Below, in pieces: positions 8,709-21,655 of a DNA stretch of 32,684 bases. The translations under genes and the position numbers were made by a program. Numbering within the stretch: position 1 is the stretch's first letter; the number at the start of each line of letters is the position of its first letter. The notes beneath the pieces were generated by a model. It did no database searches. It saw only the letters and a list, made by a program, of their open reading frames with translations, and was not told the DNA's origin. The DNA is from Calcarisporiella thermophila CBS 279.70 (lineage: Eukaryota > Fungi > Calcarisporiellomycota). The stretch lies in assembly GCF_041956535.1 (NCBI RefSeq), contig NW_027192198.1, positions 1,158,451 to 1,191,134 of the forward strand. The letters are read 5' to 3'.

Positions 8709-9989
8709 TTAGGAATAGATATTCGAGCTTTTATGGCTCTGATTCATAGTATTAGCGGCGGCGACGGCGGCCGAGAGCCAGGCCATCGCCGGGTCGGAGA
8801 TGGACTGTGTCTGGTCCGGCGGCGGGTAGTGGCTGGGGGAAAACTCCAGCTGTTGGGGGGAAACGGTGAGTATTTCGGGGAAGAAGCCAGGAGAAAACTC
8901 CTGAATGGGTATCATGCCGGGGGAGAGCTGGAACGGGAGCGTGGGCTGCGGAGCTAGCGCACTGGAAGGCGAGGAGAGGGTAATGGAGCGGGAAGGCGCC
9001 TCCGACGATGAGGACGACGACAGTGATGGCGGCGATTTGTGCAGGCTCTTCGCGGCGAGGGCGTCTCCCGCCGAAGCGCCACCGCCACTGCCTCGATTTC
9101 GCCGTCGAATGATGTCGGTCTTGAGGCTGAGAGGACGCACGACCCCATGCAGCCGGAGGAAGAGGCCGCATGCGTTGCACAGGGGCCGGCCGTTCGCATC
9201 GCGGCGCCAGAGGGGGGTGTTGCGGGTGTGGCAATTGGTGCACTCGGTGGAGCTGGAGAGCGAGGGCTTGACCCCGCGGTTTCGCGGCTCCTTTTTGAGC
9301 GAGGGATGGCCAGAAGCCTTAGAGCTAGCCTTGGTTTCAGAGGGCGAGAATTTCCTCTCCGGGGTACCCAGGCCCGGGTTCCAATTCGATCCCAGATTCC
9401 TGGAACTGGGAATTTGGAGGTCAAAATCGCGAGCCTCCTCCAACTCGCCGGTGTGGGGAATGGTGATGCTCGCGGGGGCGTACTGGCGCTTCGTGGCCAC
9501 GCCGCGAGGGGAGGAGGAATGGCGACGGTGGTCGATGTCCTGGCTGCTCCCTACTTCCTGTTCCGCTGGCGCCTCGGCCGCCTTGGCCGCTGTTTCGTCA
9601 CTCCGGCCCTTTTTCCTCTCGCCCTCGTCTTCCTCCATGACGTCGTCCAGCTCCGCCACCTTTCGTTTCTTCTTCTTCTCCATCTCTGCTTGGGCCTCGG
9701 CCCGCTGAGTGGACTCCACCTTGGCCATTGCCATTAGGCGCCAGGTGATGTTCTCCAGGCGGGCGCCGTGCGGTAGCGTGTTCTTTGCGCGGGAATAGAG
9801 ACGCCAAGCGCTCGCGGCCAGCATGCCCCGCTTGACACTGTCGTGCACGTCGAACACGGCGCGCTTGCGCTCTGCCCATGCAACCGCCTCCGCATTTCTG
9901 TTTTCCCCGAATTTGGGCGTGGTGGAGCGTTCCAGGAGGGATGCGAGAAATGAGACCTTGTGATTGACTCCGCTGCTACCACCTATCAT
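8709..9989 (-). CDS. GATA zinc-finger transcription factor, AreA/Nit-2/Gat1-like nitrogen regulator (426 aa, single exon)
   Basis: C-X2-C-X17-C-X2-C finger [50 protein letters not shown], and an N-terminal DUF1752-type motif [27 protein letters not shown] typical of AreA/Gat1. Confidence 0.93.
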
Positions 9990-10316
9990 TGGTTGACAAT
10001 AGGTTTCTGGAATGGGATGGGTACTGGAGGGGGATGGGGGAAAGGATGGGGGAAGAATTCAAAGGTGAGAGAATGAAGAAGGAATGGAATGAAACCAAAA
10101 AATATGAATTACTTGCACCCTTAATTTGGGAAAATTCCGACTTCTCCCGCCGACGGCGATTTTAATGTTTAAGAGAGGGGGGGGGAGAGAGCATATTTCT
10201 CAAAAATCACGCGAAAATGATCGCCCAAAAGATCGGGAACCTTGGCTTCAGACCAGTTTTCAGACCAACTAAAAATAAACCTGAGCTCTAAATTAAACCA
10301 AAATTCTTAATATTCT

Positions 10317-10340
10317 TTATCAGTTTTCGCCATTTTATCG
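10317..10340 (-). promoter_or_regulatory. Two HGATAR (GATA-factor) sites upstream of the GATA gene
   Basis: ttatca (10317-10322) and ttatcg (10335-10340) read TGATAA and CGATAA on the minus strand, about 330-350 bp upstream of the ATG. These are short motifs and could be chance. Confidence 0.35.
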
Positions 10341-10767
10341 GGGCCTTCGCTTTGACCAGGATGTTCGAGTTAATAGAGGTAGAAGGAAAGAATCGGGGGG
10401 AGGGGGGAGGGGGGAAGTGGGAGAGAAGGGGTCACTCCCCATTCACCACTCCGTGTATGGATCTCTGCCCACCCTTAGGGGCAAAAAGGATGGTGGAAAG
10501 ACGAGGGATTCATAGGCAAACGAAAGCGGCAGACGAGAAATTCTTCTTCTATTCGTAGCATTAGAGGTGGAAATAAGGAAGAGTTCTTGGGATAATTATA
10601 ACGAAAAGGAGAAATAAATTAGAGTTGGATGAAGCGAGATTAGAGCATAGGTTTAATACAAGATATATAGGAAAAAGCACAGGAGTAACAACGGCGGAAG
10701 TTATTAGAACAAGGGCGGTGGTTTTGTTTTTTCATCTCTAGGATGGAGTGAGGAGCTCGCCTCCACA

Positions 10768-12624
10768 TTAGCAGCAGCCGTAGGCAGGGTTGATAGGGAT
10801 GGGATAGGTGGCATTCGTGTTTTCGACCTCGAGGAAACGGGGCTTGCGGCGGCCCTGGAGCCTTTGCTCCAGCGCATAGCCGAGCGAGATGAGGGTCGGC
10901 TCGCTGTAGGCAGTGCCCCAGAACGCAATGCCAAAAGGCACGCCCCAGGGATCGATGCCGGCGGGCACGGTGACCATGGGGTAGCCGGCGAGGGCAGGCA
11001 CTTGGGTGGAGGGGGACAGGTTGTCGGCAGGCACGATCAACGCGTCCAGGCGGTGTTTCTTGAGCACGTAGTCGATGCCCTCCTCGCGGGTGTATTTGCG
11101 GTTGGTGCGGAGGGCCTCCTTGTACTCCTTGGTGTGGGTGCCGGTGGTCTTGTCGGCCTCGATCAGCACGTCCTGTCCGAAGTAGGGCATCTCGGTGTCA
11201 GCGTGCTCCTCGTTGTACTTGATGATGTCGGAGAGGGAGTGCACGCGCGAGTTCTTCAGCTCCTTCAGGTACTTGTTGAGCCCCTCCTTGAACCCGGTCT
11301 TGCATACCAGGAACTCGTTCGGCATCCATGTCCAGCCCTTGCCGAGGTTGATTTTTTCGGGGTGGGGCAGGTTGGTGTTGTTGACGACGGTGGCGCCGAG
11401 ATCCTGCATCAGGCGAATGGCCTTCTTCAGTTGCGGGATTTGGTTCTTGGTGGTGGGCGACTGCCAAATATCCCCCCACGGAATGCCAAGCCGCTTTCCG
11501 CGGAACGCATCCTTGCGCAAGTACTTGGTGTAGTCGGGCTTGGCTCGATGGATCTGCTCCCTCGTGACGGGGTCTCTCGGGTCCACGCCGCGGATCACGT
11601 TGAGCACGTGCACGGCGTCGCGCATAGTGCGGCCGATGCAGCCCACCGTGTCTTGCGCAGCGGCGAGCGGGATCACTCCGGCACGGGAGGTCAGGCCCAG
11701 GGTGGGTTTGATCCCGACCACGCCATTGCGTTGAGCCGGGGCAACCACGCTGCCATCGGTTTCCGTCCCGATAGCAACCGCGATCATGTTGGCGGCCACA
11801 GAGACGGCAGAGCCCGAGGATGAGCCTCCGGGGTCCTGGGTGGTGTTGTAGGCATTACGGGTCTGTCCCCCACGGCCAGACCACCCCTCTGAGTAGGAGG
11901 AAGCGCGAATATCGGCCCACTCGCTCATGTTGCTCTTGCCGAGGATGATGGCACCAGCCTTGCGCAACAGGGTCACGATGTATGCGTCACGGGGGGGTTT
12001 GGAGCCAACCAGGGCAAGACTGCCGGCGCCCGTGTTCATCTTGTCCTTGGTAGCGATGTTGTCCTTGACTAGAATCGGAATGCCGTGCTAAAAAGCGACG
12101 ACAGGTTAGCACTAGTTGAAGCCGCAGATTCGAATGCATTACTCACCAAGGGACCACGGACATGGCCGTGTCGGCGTTCGTGGTCGAGCTTGGCTGCAAT
12201 CTCTTCCCAATCGGGATTGAGCTCGATTACGCTGTGGAGATGCGGGTTGAGTTGTTTGATGCGCTAAGAAGGAGAATGAATAAAAGCACAAGTCAGTAAA
12301 TATCCCGCCAATCAAGGAACAAAAAAGGCGAAGCCAAAGCAGAAGAGACGGCCAGCATCCTCGTACCCTGATATAGCATTTAGTCAGCTGCACAGAAGTG
12401 AGCTTGCGCGAGGCCAGCGCGTGCTGCATCTCATCGAGAGTTGCCTCCTCAAGCTGGAATCCGTAACAATCGGACATGCGAAATTTCACGTGGGCGTCAT
12501 GGTTCCCTCCACGCTTATCGTGATGGCCGTGGTGGTTGATCTGATGGTGGTTCCCATCGTGGGCACTAACCAGGGGGGTAGAGAGAATGGCCAGGATGGC
12601 GGTCGAAATTAGTAAAAGGCGCAT
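10768..12624 (-). CDS. Secreted amidase-signature family enzyme (~564 aa, 3 exons: 12624-12367, 12263-12147, 12087-10768)
   Basis: Signal peptide MRLLLISTAILAILSTPLVSA; LEEATLDEMQ; GPLHGIPILVKDNIAT (catalytic Lys); GGSSSGS and GTETDGSV (Ser-cisSer-Lys triad); GVVGIKPTLGL; GYPMVTVPAG. Confidence 0.95.
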
Positions 12625-18870: not shown

Positions 18871-18878
18871 TATAAAAA
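18871..18878 (+). promoter_or_regulatory. Probable TATA box of the GH31 gene
   Basis: TATAAAAA about 170 bp upstream of the ATG at 19044, followed by a CT-rich tract typical of fungal core promoters. Confidence 0.45.
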
Positions 18879-19043
18879 CCAGTGAAGGGGTGTAGGGAGC
18901 TTGTATTCCTTTTCTCACCCTCTCCTCTATTCCGTCTCTCCCCAACCCACTCTTTCACTAGAATTCTTGTCCTATTTATAATATAGATACAATATAATTT
19001 TTAATTTAAAATTTTCCCAAGGGACTGAAATAATTAATAGGAA

Positions 19044-21655
19044 ATGCGTTTCACCACGCTTGTTCCAATTTTAATTGGGCTTCTCACGGGGGTTGCTGCC
19101 GAGTGGGAATCCTTTGGAAACGTGAAGGATATCACTTCCGCTGGCAAAAATACGTTTGAAATTACATCGACGGGAAAGGCGCGAGCAAAAGTCATCTTCT
19201 ACGAAGATCGCGTATTTCGCGTAGTGGCCACGCATGACGGCAAATATGAGGACATTGGAGATACGGATTTCGTTGTGCAAAAGAAATTCAAGGAACCTCA
19301 AGTGAAGCTTGAAAAGAAAAAGGATGCCTTCGAGATCAAGTCCCGCGATGTTACGCTGCGCGTGAAGAAAAATCCTATGTTGCTCACACTCTTGGATAAG
19401 AAAGGCGCTGTCATATTTGAGGAAAAAGAGCCCCTCTCGGTGGACTGGAAGGCCGAAAAAACCAAACAAACTCTTGGCATTGGGAAGGATGATCAATACT
19501 TCGGTGGAGGTATGCAAATGGATCGATGGAACCATCGTGGAAAGCGCATCCGTGTGGAGGTCAACTATGACTGGGATTTTGGCCAGCCGAACAGTCAGCC
19601 ATTCTACATGTCCAATGCAGGTACCATCATTTGCATATGCTGCGCTCGATCCATGACTGATTGAAGATTCATTTGCCATTTGTAGGATACGGCGTGCTCC
19701 GCCATACGTTTGCTCCAGGAATCTACGACTTCACCGATTCTCCCCTTACCGCGACCCACAATGAAACCCGCTTTGATGCTTACTACTTCAACGGCAATTT
19801 GAAAGAAATCCTCGACCAATACACCGAGCTCGTCGGGAAACCCTTCCTCCCCCCGATTTATGGCCTCGAGCTCGGCGATAGTGATTGCTACTTGAATAAT
19901 GCTAACCGAGGCAAGCGCAACACTCTTAAAGATTCAACTGCTGTTGCCGATGGATTCGTTAAAAATGGTATTGTACCATTGGTGAATGGTTTTCTCTCAA
20001 AGCTTACATTTACCCATTGTCATCCTCATTTTACTATCAGATATCCCACTTGGATGGATGCTTGTCAACGACGGATATGGCTGTGGATATGAAAATCTAG
20101 TGGAAACCCACAACGCATTGCAGAATCGCCATATGGAGCTCGGCCTGTGGACCGAATCAGACTTAACAAACCAACCCTTCGAGGTTGGGAAAGCCGGTGT
20201 GCGTGTTCGCAAACTCGACGTTAAATGGGTCGGCTCCGGATATCAATTTGCATACAATGCTTGCAATATTGCCTATGATGGAATCGAAAAGTATAGCAAT
20301 GCACGTGGTTTCGTGTGGATCGTTGAGGGCTGGGCAGGTATAATATCCTAACGGATACACACTATTACATCGCCGGCCTTTAATACGTTTAATTAACCGG
20401 TCAAAAACTTTCCTGATATCCTAGGAACACAAAAATGTGCTGTAGCTTGGACTGGTGATCAATCTGGTAACATGGGCAACACTGCGCGACACGTTGCTAC
20501 CTTCCACGGATCAGGGCTCTCGGGGATGCCTTGGGTCGCTGGTGATGTGGACGGTATCTTTGGTGGTACTAACATCTCTTCGGTGCGCGATTTACAGCTC
20601 AAGGCATTTAGTCCATTGCTTATGAACATGAATGGATGGGCCAAGTTCGACAAACAGCAATGGCGCCGAGGCGAGCCGTGGACAAGTATCAATCGAAAGT
20701 ATTTGAAATTACGCATGCGTTTGATGCCGTACATCTATTCCTATGCATTTGAGGCACACACCAAGGGACTTCCTTTGACCCGTTCACTAGTGCTTGAGGT
20801 AGATTGACTCGCTGATATATATCATGGATTCATCCCACTCTAACTTAGAATACCACATAGTACCCTAAAGACAAGAATACCTGGACTGAAGCGGCCAAAC
20901 ATGAATACCTCTTCGGAGAATATTTTCTTGTGGCCCCCGTCATTGACGACGGCGAACAGCGTGACAATATCTACCTACCAGAGGGAGAGTGGATTGATTA
21001 TTGGACGAGCAAGGTCTACCAGGGATCAAAGGTGATCTACACCTATCCAGCTCCTTATGATACCTTACCGCTGTTTGTGAAGGCCGGGGCCATCATTCCT
21101 ATGTGGCCCCAGGTTAACACTGCGTCAGAGCGCAAGCCCGATGATGATTTAGTACTGGATGTGTATCCTAAGGGCAAATCGAGCTTCACTCTCTACGAGG
21201 ATGATATGGTTACGCGCGAACATCGCGATGGCCACTATTCACTCCAGACATTTGAGTCACAAGTCACCGGGAATAAGATTGTGGTGCGCATTGGCAAATC
21301 AAATGGCAGCTACAGCCTAAAGCCTCAGAGCCGTGGATATGAAGTACGCGTGCATGTGGGCAGCAACCCACGAAAGGTTACTTGGAGCAGCGGTAAAGCT
21401 CAGCGCCAAACTCAGCTGACCTTCACTAAAGACACGGGTTCAAAACACTCGGCTCAGTGGTGGGTTGAGAGTGCCCATACGCACGAGGAAGGAAAATCAG
21501 AACGTCCTCAAACTAAACAGAAGCATTCGAAGAAATCAAAACACGAAGTTAACAAACGAGCATTCAAAAAGGCCTCTGGATATGATAAAGTAGTGGTTGT
21601 CCGTGTGCCGGATGCATCCCTTAATAAGGAGCACACAGTTACTGTTGAGTTGTAA
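19044..21655 (+). CDS. Secreted glycoside hydrolase family 31, bacterial Nag31/CPE1046-like (putative alpha-N-acetylgalactosaminidase); ~774 aa, 5 exons: 19044-19620, 19686-19967, 20041-20337, 20425-20798, 20861-21655
   Basis: Signal peptide MRFTTLVPILIGLLTGVAA; YFGGGMQ; PFYMSNAGYGVLR; DIPLGWMLVNDGYGCGY; KLDVKWVG (nucleophile Asp); GWAGTQ..WTGDQSG (acid/base Asp); GDVDGIFGG; RLMPYIYSYA; YLPEGEWIDYW; LPLFVKAGAIIP; FTLYEDD. The four GT-AG introns are in phase (2325 nt CDS). Confidence 0.92.

What the first reader, a model, noticed from the sequence alone, without database searches (positions are those of the whole stretch)
19044..21655. Bacterial-type Nag31 (alpha-GalNAcase-like) GH31 domesticated in a fungus: probable HGT with 4 gained introns and a secretion signal
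Seen: the spliced protein lacks the WIDMNE nucleophile motif of ordinary fungal GH31 alpha-glucosidases. It has instead PLGWMLVNDGYGCGY, KLDVKWVG, GWAGTQ..WTGDQSG and GDVDGIFGG, plus a signal peptide, four in-phase GT-AG introns and a TATA/CT-rich promoter, and it lies between core eukaryotic genes (SPS19, IFM1), so contamination is unlikely. Known: this motif set (NDGYG, KtDVaWVG, WtGDQ, DmDGIFGG) marks the CPE1046/Nag31 clade of GH31. Its characterised members release alpha-GalNAc from O-glycan cores (Tn antigen), and the lepidopteran member was itself acquired from bacteria. Inference: an old bacteria-to-fungus transfer; from memory the DSDCYLNNANRG segment resembles actinobacterial homologues. 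It would give the fungus a secreted enzyme for animal mucin/glycoprotein or other alpha-GalNAc glycans, suggesting a host-associated or glycan-scavenging niche.
Basis: partly seen in the sequence, partly recalled or inferred. Interest (0 to 1): 0.85.

Follow-up and report, generated by a model that had tools for sequence, protein, structure and literature searches.

The report
Actinobacteria-derived GalNAc-cleaving enzyme in early fungi
A soil fungus carries a secreted enzyme of bacterial origin that probably clips the sugar GalNAc off animal-type glycoproteins; the same gene lineage occurs in chitin-eating chytrids and insect-attacking Conidiobolus, so it entered fungi long ago rather than in this species alone.

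Summary
The gene is real: five exons, four GT-AG introns, 774 aa, identical to the public model VTP21DRAFT_11331 of Calcarisporiella thermophila, single-copy on a 1.2-Mb contig between an SPS19-like gene and mitochondrial IF2. Exons 1-4 have Enterococcus faecalis GH31 alpha-N-acetylgalactosaminidase as best solved relative; both catalytic Asp (D346, D397) and the mapped pocket residues are kept, so an alpha-GalNAcase (GH31_18-like) is likely, not assayed. Bacterial origin holds, but it is not private to this fungus: relatives in chytrids and in Conidiobolus/Neoconidiobolus form one fungal clade with it (UFBoot/SH-aLRT 99-100/99) inside an Actinomycetota-Bacillaceae group. AU tests reject separate transfers from sampled bacteria and reject a fungi+choanoflagellate clade. 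None of its four introns is shared with other fungi, while chytrids share theirs. Best reading: one old actinobacterial transfer into early fungi, then wide loss; fungus-to-fungus passage is the main rival. A host-associated niche is unsupported (saprobe); scavenging invertebrate O-GalNAc glycoproteins is inferred. No paper I could read describes the fungal clade; the GH31 subfamily paper was not available.

The parts
18871..18877 (+). TATA-like box (TATAAAA), 173 nt upstream of the ATG; pyrimidine tract follows at about 18907-18956
   Evidence: common motif in this window, weak
19044..19620 (+). Exon 1: signal-peptide-like N-terminus (aa 1-19) and GH31 N-terminal beta-sandwich, includes W177 (= EfNag31A W221)
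   Evidence: (PF13802)
19621..19685 (+). Intron 1, 65 nt, GT-AG, phase 1
   Evidence: not shared with other fungal members
19686..19967 (+). Exon 2: start of the catalytic barrel, with the DSDCYLNNANRG loop shared with actinomycetes and chytrids
19968..20040 (+). Intron 2, 73 nt, GT-AG, phase 1
20041..20337 (+). Exon 3: NDGY motif (D297, Y299), W323, K344 and the catalytic nucleophile D346 in KLDVKW
   Evidence: aligns to the column that differs between 6m76 (D), 7f7r (N) and 7f7q (A)
20338..20424 (+). Intron 3, 87 nt, GT-AG, phase 1 (contains in-frame stops if retained)
20425..20798 (+). Exon 4: acid/base D397 in WTGDQ, D426/I430/F431, M454, W457; divergent stretch 402-410
   Evidence: (PF01055)
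20799..20860 (+). Intron 4, 62 nt, GT-AG, phase 0, CTAAC branch-like site at -21
20861..21655 (+). Exon 5: GH31 C-proximal domain, DUF5110, a lysine-rich insert near the end, stop; no carbohydrate-binding module
   Evidence: (PF21365, PF17137)

Best explanation
The gene encodes a secreted, retaining exo-alpha-N-acetylgalactosaminidase of the GH31_18/Nag31 kind. Shown: intact gene model, GH31 domain order, both catalytic Asp and the pocket residues of EfNag31A. Inferred from established GH31 chemistry: D346 attacks the anomeric carbon of a terminal alpha-GalNAc, D397 acts as acid/base, and the Val after the nucleophile (Met in the DMNE enzymes) leaves room for the N-acetyl group. Origin: one transfer from an actinomycete-like bacterium into an early fungus, with the C-terminal sugar-binding modules that many bacterial relatives carry (NPCBM, F5/8, ricin) absent, a eukaryotic signal peptide in place, and introns gained separately in chytrids and in the Calcarisporiella line; kept in chitin- and arthropod-using lineages and not found in the other fungi my searches reached. 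Role (inferred): stripping the core GalNAc from invertebrate O-glycoproteins in dead arthropod or other animal material, after beta-galactosidases remove core-1 Gal, to gain the sugar and open the protein to proteases.
For: Best PDB relative of exons 1-4 is EfNag31A (E 1e-12, 1e-10, 1e-7, 9e-27). D297, Y299, W323, K344, D346, V347, W349, W394, D397, D426, I430, F431, M454, W457 and W177 match the family consensus. GH31_18 holds only alpha-GalNAcases so far (PMC13096917; 10.1101/2024.03.27.586211). Fungal monophyly 99/99 (64 rows, LG+G4) and 100/99 (40 rows, LG+C20 PMSF); kept with slow sites only (98.8), Dayhoff-6 recoding (99.5), and with either partner group removed (99.8, 100). Fungi+Actinomycetota-like rows 97/96; with Bacillaceae 100/100. 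AU rejects Calcarisporiella+Bacillaceae (p 8e-9), +either actino group (0.024, 0.0002), other placements outside the fungal clade (0.002, 0.002), chytrids or Conidiobolus separate (0.004, 0.0002) and fungi+choanoflagellate (2e-5). Chytrid genes share introns at positions 171/phase 0 and 292/phase 2 across Polychytrium and Chytridiales, so the gene is old there. GC3 0.52 is like the neighbours' 0.43-0.54. The genome keeps ordinary W-DMNE GH31 genes elsewhere and two GH35 loci. Invertebrate O-glycans are mostly Tn and core 1 (PMC6272458).
Against: No activity assay; no member of this actinomycete/Bacillaceae/fungal subclade was among the characterised enzymes named in the papers read, and identity to the deepest Nag31-like rows is only 33-39%. 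Calcarisporiella deviates from conserved residues just after the acid/base (W>M402, R>A406, P>A410) and has K348 for Ala. No intron is shared among the three fungal lineages and the Conidiobolus genes are essentially intronless. Vertical descent needs many losses (Mucorales, Mortierellomycotina, Glomeromycotina, Dikarya and others; from my knowledge of fungal phylogeny). The order of the three fungal lineages is unresolved (87/62; Calcarisporiella+chytrids not rejected, p 0.30). The exact donor is unresolved: actinomycete monophyly with fungi outside is not rejected (p 0.33), and slow sites put a Bacillaceae row next to fungi.
Confidence: 0.45

Rival explanations
1. Same enzyme, one entry from bacteria, but spread afterwards by fungus-to-fungus transfer among fungi sharing arthropod/chitin substrates (for example from chytrids to Ancylistaceae and to Calcarisporiella).
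For: Very patchy distribution, no shared intron site among the three lineages, intronless Conidiobolus copies; fungal monophyly fits equally well.
Against: The weakly supported branching (Calcarisporiella+Entomophthoromycotina versus chytrids) matches the species tree; no lineage nests inside another; long stems (0.57-0.84) imply great age; Calcarisporiella also keeps other families lost from most Mucoromycotina, such as tyrosinases (PMC10079182).
Confidence: 0.3
2. Two or three independent transfers from one bacterial lineage that is extinct or unsampled (for example a fungus-associated actinomycete); the fungal copies look monophyletic only because the donor clade is missing.
For: No shared introns across lineages; BLAST identity to bacteria (50-55%) equals or exceeds that to other fungi (49-54%); seven columns, mostly N-terminal, match bacteria rather than other fungi against three the other way.
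Against: No bacterial row among about 440 proteins fetched from very large metagenome-derived collections falls inside the fungal clade; AU tests reject all sampled donors for single lineages.
Confidence: 0.14
3. The protein belongs to the clade but acts on another substrate (alpha-GalNAc of microbial wall or biofilm polymers, or a different alpha-sugar), or is poorly active because of the changed segment 402-410.
For: Soil actinomycetes and bacilli dominate the sister groups; Hoskinsella GH31_18 cleaved only the pNP substrate (PMC13096917); substitutions at conserved positions; paralogues in other fungi vary at the nucleophile+1 position.
Against: All mapped -1 pocket residues kept; 8 deviations in 142 conserved columns is within the range of other intact members; bacterial relatives carry NPCBM and F5/8-type modules, families known for Gal/GalNAc binding (CBM32 of the C. 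perfringens enzyme binds GalNAc).
Confidence: 0.15
4. Vertical inheritance of a eukaryotic GH31 lineage from the opisthokont or eukaryote ancestor.
For: Related genes exist in a choanoflagellate (Salpingoeca helianthica) and in dinoflagellates.
Against: Those sit in a different clade next to Myxococcota; fungi+choanoflagellate rejected, p 2e-5; fungi are nested under several layers of bacterial branches.
Confidence: 0.03
5. Bacterial contamination or assembly chimera.
For: Closest BLAST hits are bacterial.
Against: Four spliceosomal introns needed to keep the frame, host-like GC3, position inside a 1.2-Mb contig between spliced eukaryotic genes, and orthologues in other fungi.
Confidence: 0.01

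Closest known systems
EfNag31A / EfGH31, Enterococcus faecalis GH31 alpha-N-acetylgalactosaminidase (PDB 6m76, 7f7q, 7f7r), CAZy GH31_18
   Same: Domain order of the core, nucleophile and acid/base motifs, and pocket residues.
   Different: Eukaryotic, spliced, signal peptide, no wall anchor or extra C-terminal modules; Val381 for Leu at the L492-equivalent; Lys348 for Ala; divergent 402-410 segment; belongs to an actinomycete/Bacillaceae subclade far from the Enterococcus-like rows.
Lepidopteran GH31 (BmGH31/BmNag31, DpGH31)
   Same: Same subfamily, also a bacteria-to-eukaryote transfer (PMC3606386).
   Different: Donor Enterococcus, genes intronless, recipient insects; a separate event. The lepidopteran sequences were not in my trees.
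Other characterised GH31_18 enzymes (Bacteroides caccae, B. thetaiotaomicron BT3169, Akkermansia Amuc_1008, Clostridium perfringens, Hoskinsella)
   Same: Predicted release of alpha-GalNAc; most act on core GalNAc linked to peptide.
   Different: All from gut bacteria and mostly with CBM32 modules; the present enzyme is from a soil saprobe and has none.
Uncharacterised actinomycete and Bacillaceae GH31 proteins with NPCBM/NEW2 or F5/8 modules (Streptomyces, Nocardia, Kitasatospora, Jiangella, Virgibacillus, Lentibacillus)
   Same: 50-55% identity over about 680 aa; the L[HN]NANRG loop is shared with many actinomycetes.
   Different: Bacterial, often with appended binding modules; annotated only as alpha-glucosidase or by domain.
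Bacteria-derived xenologs of early-diverging fungi (PMC11291939)
   Same: Intron gain after transfer and loss of bacterial domains are described there as common.
   Different: That survey's text and held supplements gave no hit for GH31 or for the Conidiobolus accessions; this case spans three phyla.

Membership tests
Glycoside hydrolase family 31 | N-terminal beta-sandwich, TIM barrel, C-proximal and distal beta domains | tested here: met
   PF13802, PF01055, PF21365, PF17137 over their cut-offs, exon by exon
Glycoside hydrolase family 31 | Two catalytic Asp (nucleophile, acid/base) | tested here: met
   D346 aligns to the residue mutated in 7f7q/7f7r; D397 in WTGD, conserved in 62 of 63 rows
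GH31_18 / Nag31 alpha-GalNAcases | Nearest characterised relative is a GH31_18 enzyme | tested here: met
   EfNag31A is the top PDB hit for exons 1-4 by a wide margin, third-tier for exon 5; a close Bacillus relative scores 455 bits against it, 247 against the next GH31
GH31_18 / Nag31 alpha-GalNAcases | GalNAc pocket residues (W221, D384, Y386, K453, V456, L492, D538, I542, M567, W570 in EfNag31A numbering; list from memory, positions checked on the HMMER alignments) | tested here: met
   All identical except L492>V381, which is the majority residue of the clade (46 of 63)
GH31_18 / Nag31 alpha-GalNAcases | Formal CAZy/dbCAN subfamily HMM or SSN assignment | not testable with these tools
   No subfamily HMM library; the defining paper (PMC10074150) is not held
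GH31_18 / Nag31 alpha-GalNAcases | Hydrolysis of alpha-GalNAc (pNP substrate, peptide-linked core GalNAc) | not testable with these tools
   Needs an enzyme assay
Ordinary eukaryotic GH31 alpha-glucosidases (GH31_1: lysosomal-type, ER glucosidase II) | W-x-D-M-N-E nucleophile motif | tested here: not met
   Absent; present in two other GH31 loci of the same genome
Bacteria-to-fungus horizontal transfer | Eukaryotic gene nested among bacterial homologues with support | tested here: met
   root taken on distant Bacillota-type Nag31 rows
Bacteria-to-fungus horizontal transfer | Integration in the host genome (introns, flanks, composition) | tested here: met
Bacteria-to-fungus horizontal transfer | Absence from most fungi and outgroups | tested here: inconclusive
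   No other fungal groups among the top hits, but those lists are capped and one search missed known members, so absence is not shown
Single ancient acquisition with vertical descent | Fungal gene tree matches species tree; shared introns | tested here: inconclusive
   Monophyly met; internal order 87/62, alternative not rejected (p 0.30); no intron shared across phyla

The most novel reading that the evidence does not exclude
An actinobacterial alpha-GalNAcase entered fungi once, before chytrids and terrestrial fungi split or by later passage between fungal phyla, and is kept specifically by fungi that feed on arthropod remains or live arthropods, where it removes Tn-type GalNAc from cuticle and gut glycoproteins: a fungal O-glycan-stripping activity not described so far, thermostable in Calcarisporiella.
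Probability: 0.3. Interest if true: 0.6.

Novelty: new member of a known kind. Interest (0 to 1): 0.42.

Why it matters
It would be the first fungal branch of GH31_18 to be characterised, and shows that GH31 counts in early-diverging fungi, read as alpha-glucosidases in surveys (PMC6690862), include a different activity. A gene shared by chytrids, Conidiobolus-type fungi and the deepest Mucoromycota-side lineage dates a bacterial transfer to early fungal history or documents cross-phylum transfer. Coming from a thermophile and lacking bulky appended modules, the enzyme is a practical candidate for O-glycan analysis. The enzyme class and the mode of origin are both known kinds, which caps the interest.

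Tried and rejected
RNA support: the look-up of sequencing runs listed no RNA run. The search for related loci on bacterial genomes gave only five distant loci. My first exon-5 start was off by one base and gave stops; corrected. An alternative acceptor at 20849 for intron 4 is out of frame. Best-BLAST donor Bacillaceae: rejected by AU. Long-branch attraction as the cause of fungal monophyly: not supported by the mixture model, slow sites, recoding or taxon removal, and equally long dinoflagellate/choanoflagellate branches do not join the fungi. Support values printed were shifted by re-rooting; one search gives the correct ones. GH101 search of the genome was uninformative (control silent). 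No hidden gene found between the SDR and this gene. Rahfeld 2019, Miyazaki 2020/2022 and Arumapperuma 2023 were not held. As the operators asked, the spliced model was searched only exon by exon: the joined protein was never sent as a query to a database search, fold or atlas; it came back as hit P0188 from searches with other fungi's proteins and was used only in local alignments and trees. No contig taken for human was met.

Full report
Observation. The region 19044-21655 holds a five-exon gene (19044-19620, 19686-19967, 20041-20337, 20425-20798, 20861-21655) with four GT-AG introns of 65, 73, 87 and 62 nt, phases 1, 1, 1, 0, giving 774 aa and a stop. The only markedly hydrophobic stretch is the N-terminal 3-19. 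A homologue search with a chytrid protein returned a 774-aa NCBI protein of Calcarisporiella thermophila, VTP21DRAFT_11331 (P0188), identical letter for letter to my model, so an independent annotation has the same four introns. The gene is single-copy and lies on a contig of more than 1.19 Mb in a 28-Mb assembly, between a spliced 2,4-dienoyl-CoA-reductase-like SDR and a mitochondrial-type IF2. GC3 is 0.52 against 0.43-0.54 in these neighbours. The TATA box is there but common in the window. No RNA run was listed, so splicing is not shown by reads.

What the protein is. Pfam gives the GH31 N-terminal, barrel, C-proximal and DUF5110 domains in order. Exons 1-4 each have Enterococcus faecalis GH31 alpha-N-acetylgalactosaminidase (6m76, 7f7q, 7f7r) as best solved relative; the less specific C-terminal exon prefers other bacterial GH31s. 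The D in KLDVKW (D346) aligns with the column where 6m76 has D, 7f7r N and 7f7q A, that is the nucleophile mutants. D397 of WTGDQ is the acid/base position. Mapping the EfNag31A pocket (residue list from memory, positions verified on the printed alignments) gives W177, D297, Y299, W323, K344, V347, W349, W394, D426, I430, F431, M454 and W457 identical, and V381 for Leu, the majority residue in this part of the family. Papers read state that GH31_18 holds only alpha-GalNAcases so far (PMC13096917) and that members remove core GalNAc from peptide (10.1101/2024.03.27.586211; PMC11992087), with one member active only on the pNP substrate (PMC13096917). The genome has ordinary W-DMNE GH31 genes at two other loci. 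I put alpha-GalNAcase activity at about 0.85. Points of doubt: K348 for Ala and a changed segment after the acid/base (M402, A406, A410), though 8 deviations in 142 conserved columns is within the range of intact relatives.

Relatives. The exon-4 search of 1.84 billion representatives and three full-length searches with other fungi's proteins found close relatives in Bacillaceae (52-55% identity), Actinomycetota (about 50%), and in fungi: Polychytrium, Chytriomyces, Obelidium, Podochytrium, Rhizoclosmatium, Siphonaria (chytrids) and Conidiobolus coronatus (three copies) and Neoconidiobolus thromboides (two). More distant members occur in the choanoflagellate Salpingoeca helianthica and in dinoflagellates. 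Nearly all fungal members start with a signal-peptide-like stretch and lack the NPCBM, F5/8 or ricin modules of many bacterial relatives. These lists are capped and word-filtered (one search missed known members), so absence from other fungi is suggested, not shown.

Phylogeny. In a 176-row FastTree, a 64-row IQ-TREE LG+G4 tree and a 40-row LG+C20 PMSF tree, all fungal sequences form one clade (SH 100; 99/99; 100/99). It sits with Actinomycetota-like rows (97/96), these with Bacillaceae (100/100), and further out lie Myxococcota plus the choanoflagellate and dinoflagellate rows, then Paenibacillus, Clostridium and other Nag31-like rows used as root. Fungal monophyly survives removal of fast sites, Dayhoff-6 recoding, and removal of either partner group (98.8, 99.5, 99.8, 100). 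AU tests reject Calcarisporiella with Bacillaceae (8e-9), with either actinomycete group (0.024, 0.0002), outside a clade of the other fungi plus actinomycetes (0.002), chytrids or Conidiobolus placed separately (0.004, 0.0002), and fungi plus choanoflagellate (2e-5) (groups were chosen after seeing the first tree, LG+G4). Not resolved: the order of the three fungal lineages and the exact donor (p 0.30, 0.33). Rows left out: fragments under 450 aa, near-duplicates; the lepidopteran and E. faecalis sequences themselves were not on hand.

Introns. Mapped on the Calcarisporiella protein, its introns fall at 193, 287, 386 (phase 1) and 511 (phase 0). Chytrid genes share 171/0 (four genes) and 292/2 (two genes) among themselves; four of the Conidiobolus-type genes examined or inferred have none or one near the end (P0189, P0291, P0292 none; P0396 one). 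So the four introns are most simply gains in the Calcarisporiella line, the gene is old in chytrids, and it was probably intronless when the three lineages parted or exchanged it.

How it most likely works. Shown: an intact, integrated, secretion-type GH31 with the Nag31 active site, from a bacterial stock, shared by three fungal phyla as one clade. Inferred: retaining double displacement on terminal alpha-GalNAc; one entry from an actinomycete-like donor into an early fungus; wide later loss. The carriers are, from my knowledge, chitin-bait chytrids and arthropod-associated Ancylistaceae; invertebrate O-glycans are mostly Tn and core 1 (PMC6272458); the genome has two GH35 loci and many GH18 hits. 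I therefore favour scavenging of invertebrate O-GalNAc glycoproteins. C. thermophila is called a saprobe and keeps other families typical of Entomophthoromycotina, such as tyrosinases (PMC10079182), which fits retention of old genes and does not fit a host-associated niche. Rivals: fungus-to-fungus spread (0.30), repeated transfer from an unsampled donor (0.14), another substrate (0.15, partly independent of origin), vertical eukaryotic descent (0.03), contamination (0.01).

Comparison and novelty. It works like EfNag31A and passes the sequence tests for GH31_18, but the formal subfamily HMM and the activity could not be tested. It fails the motif test for ordinary eukaryotic GH31 glucosidases. 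The lepidopteran gene is a separate Enterococcus transfer (PMC3606386). Transfers of bacterial glycosidases into early fungi with intron gain and domain loss are a known pattern (PMC11291939), whose text and held supplements did not mention this family. Ten literature searches found no description of a fungal GH31 alpha-GalNAcase, but the subfamily paper was not readable and CAZy may already list these proteins.

Noticed in passing
P0018 (L013:3001-6962, assembly GCA_027596945.1) and P0142 (Podochytrium): Divergent paralogues in the chytrid subclade; P0018 has Asn at both catalytic Asp positions and a long C-terminal extension, P0142 deviates at 42 of 142 conserved columns: probable pseudo-enzymes or binding proteins.
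   Followed up: partly
P0176, P0179, P0200; P0291, P0292: Fungal members with the nucleophile motif changed to KLDEKW (two chytrids and one Conidiobolus copy, apparently in parallel) or KLDGTW with DLNGI: possible shifts of sugar specificity after duplication.
   Followed up: no
P0060 (Salpingoeca helianthica), P0023/P0031/P0022 (Durusdinium, Cladocopium): Nag31-like genes in a choanoflagellate and in symbiotic dinoflagellates form a separate clade near Myxococcota: further eukaryotic acquisitions of this subfamily.
   Followed up: partly
window 21470-21570: Lysine/histidine-rich insert near the C-terminus, with a dibasic KR site, not seen in the other fungal members.
   Followed up: no
window 8709-12039: AreA-type GATA factor and an amidase have GC3 0.75-0.83, far above the 0.43-0.54 of genes at 16-27 kb: sharp compositional heterogeneity within the window.
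   Followed up: no
L010 (Conidiobolus coronatus KQ964531.1): At least two of the three Conidiobolus copies lie within 10 kb, divergently, next to an M28 peptidase; the third is on a contig of the same length.
   Followed up: no
L024 (G000:C5:461095-461400) and L018 (G000:C1:1324878-1325927): Two further GH31 loci in this genome in which my motif scan found no W-DMNE; not classified.
   Followed up: no
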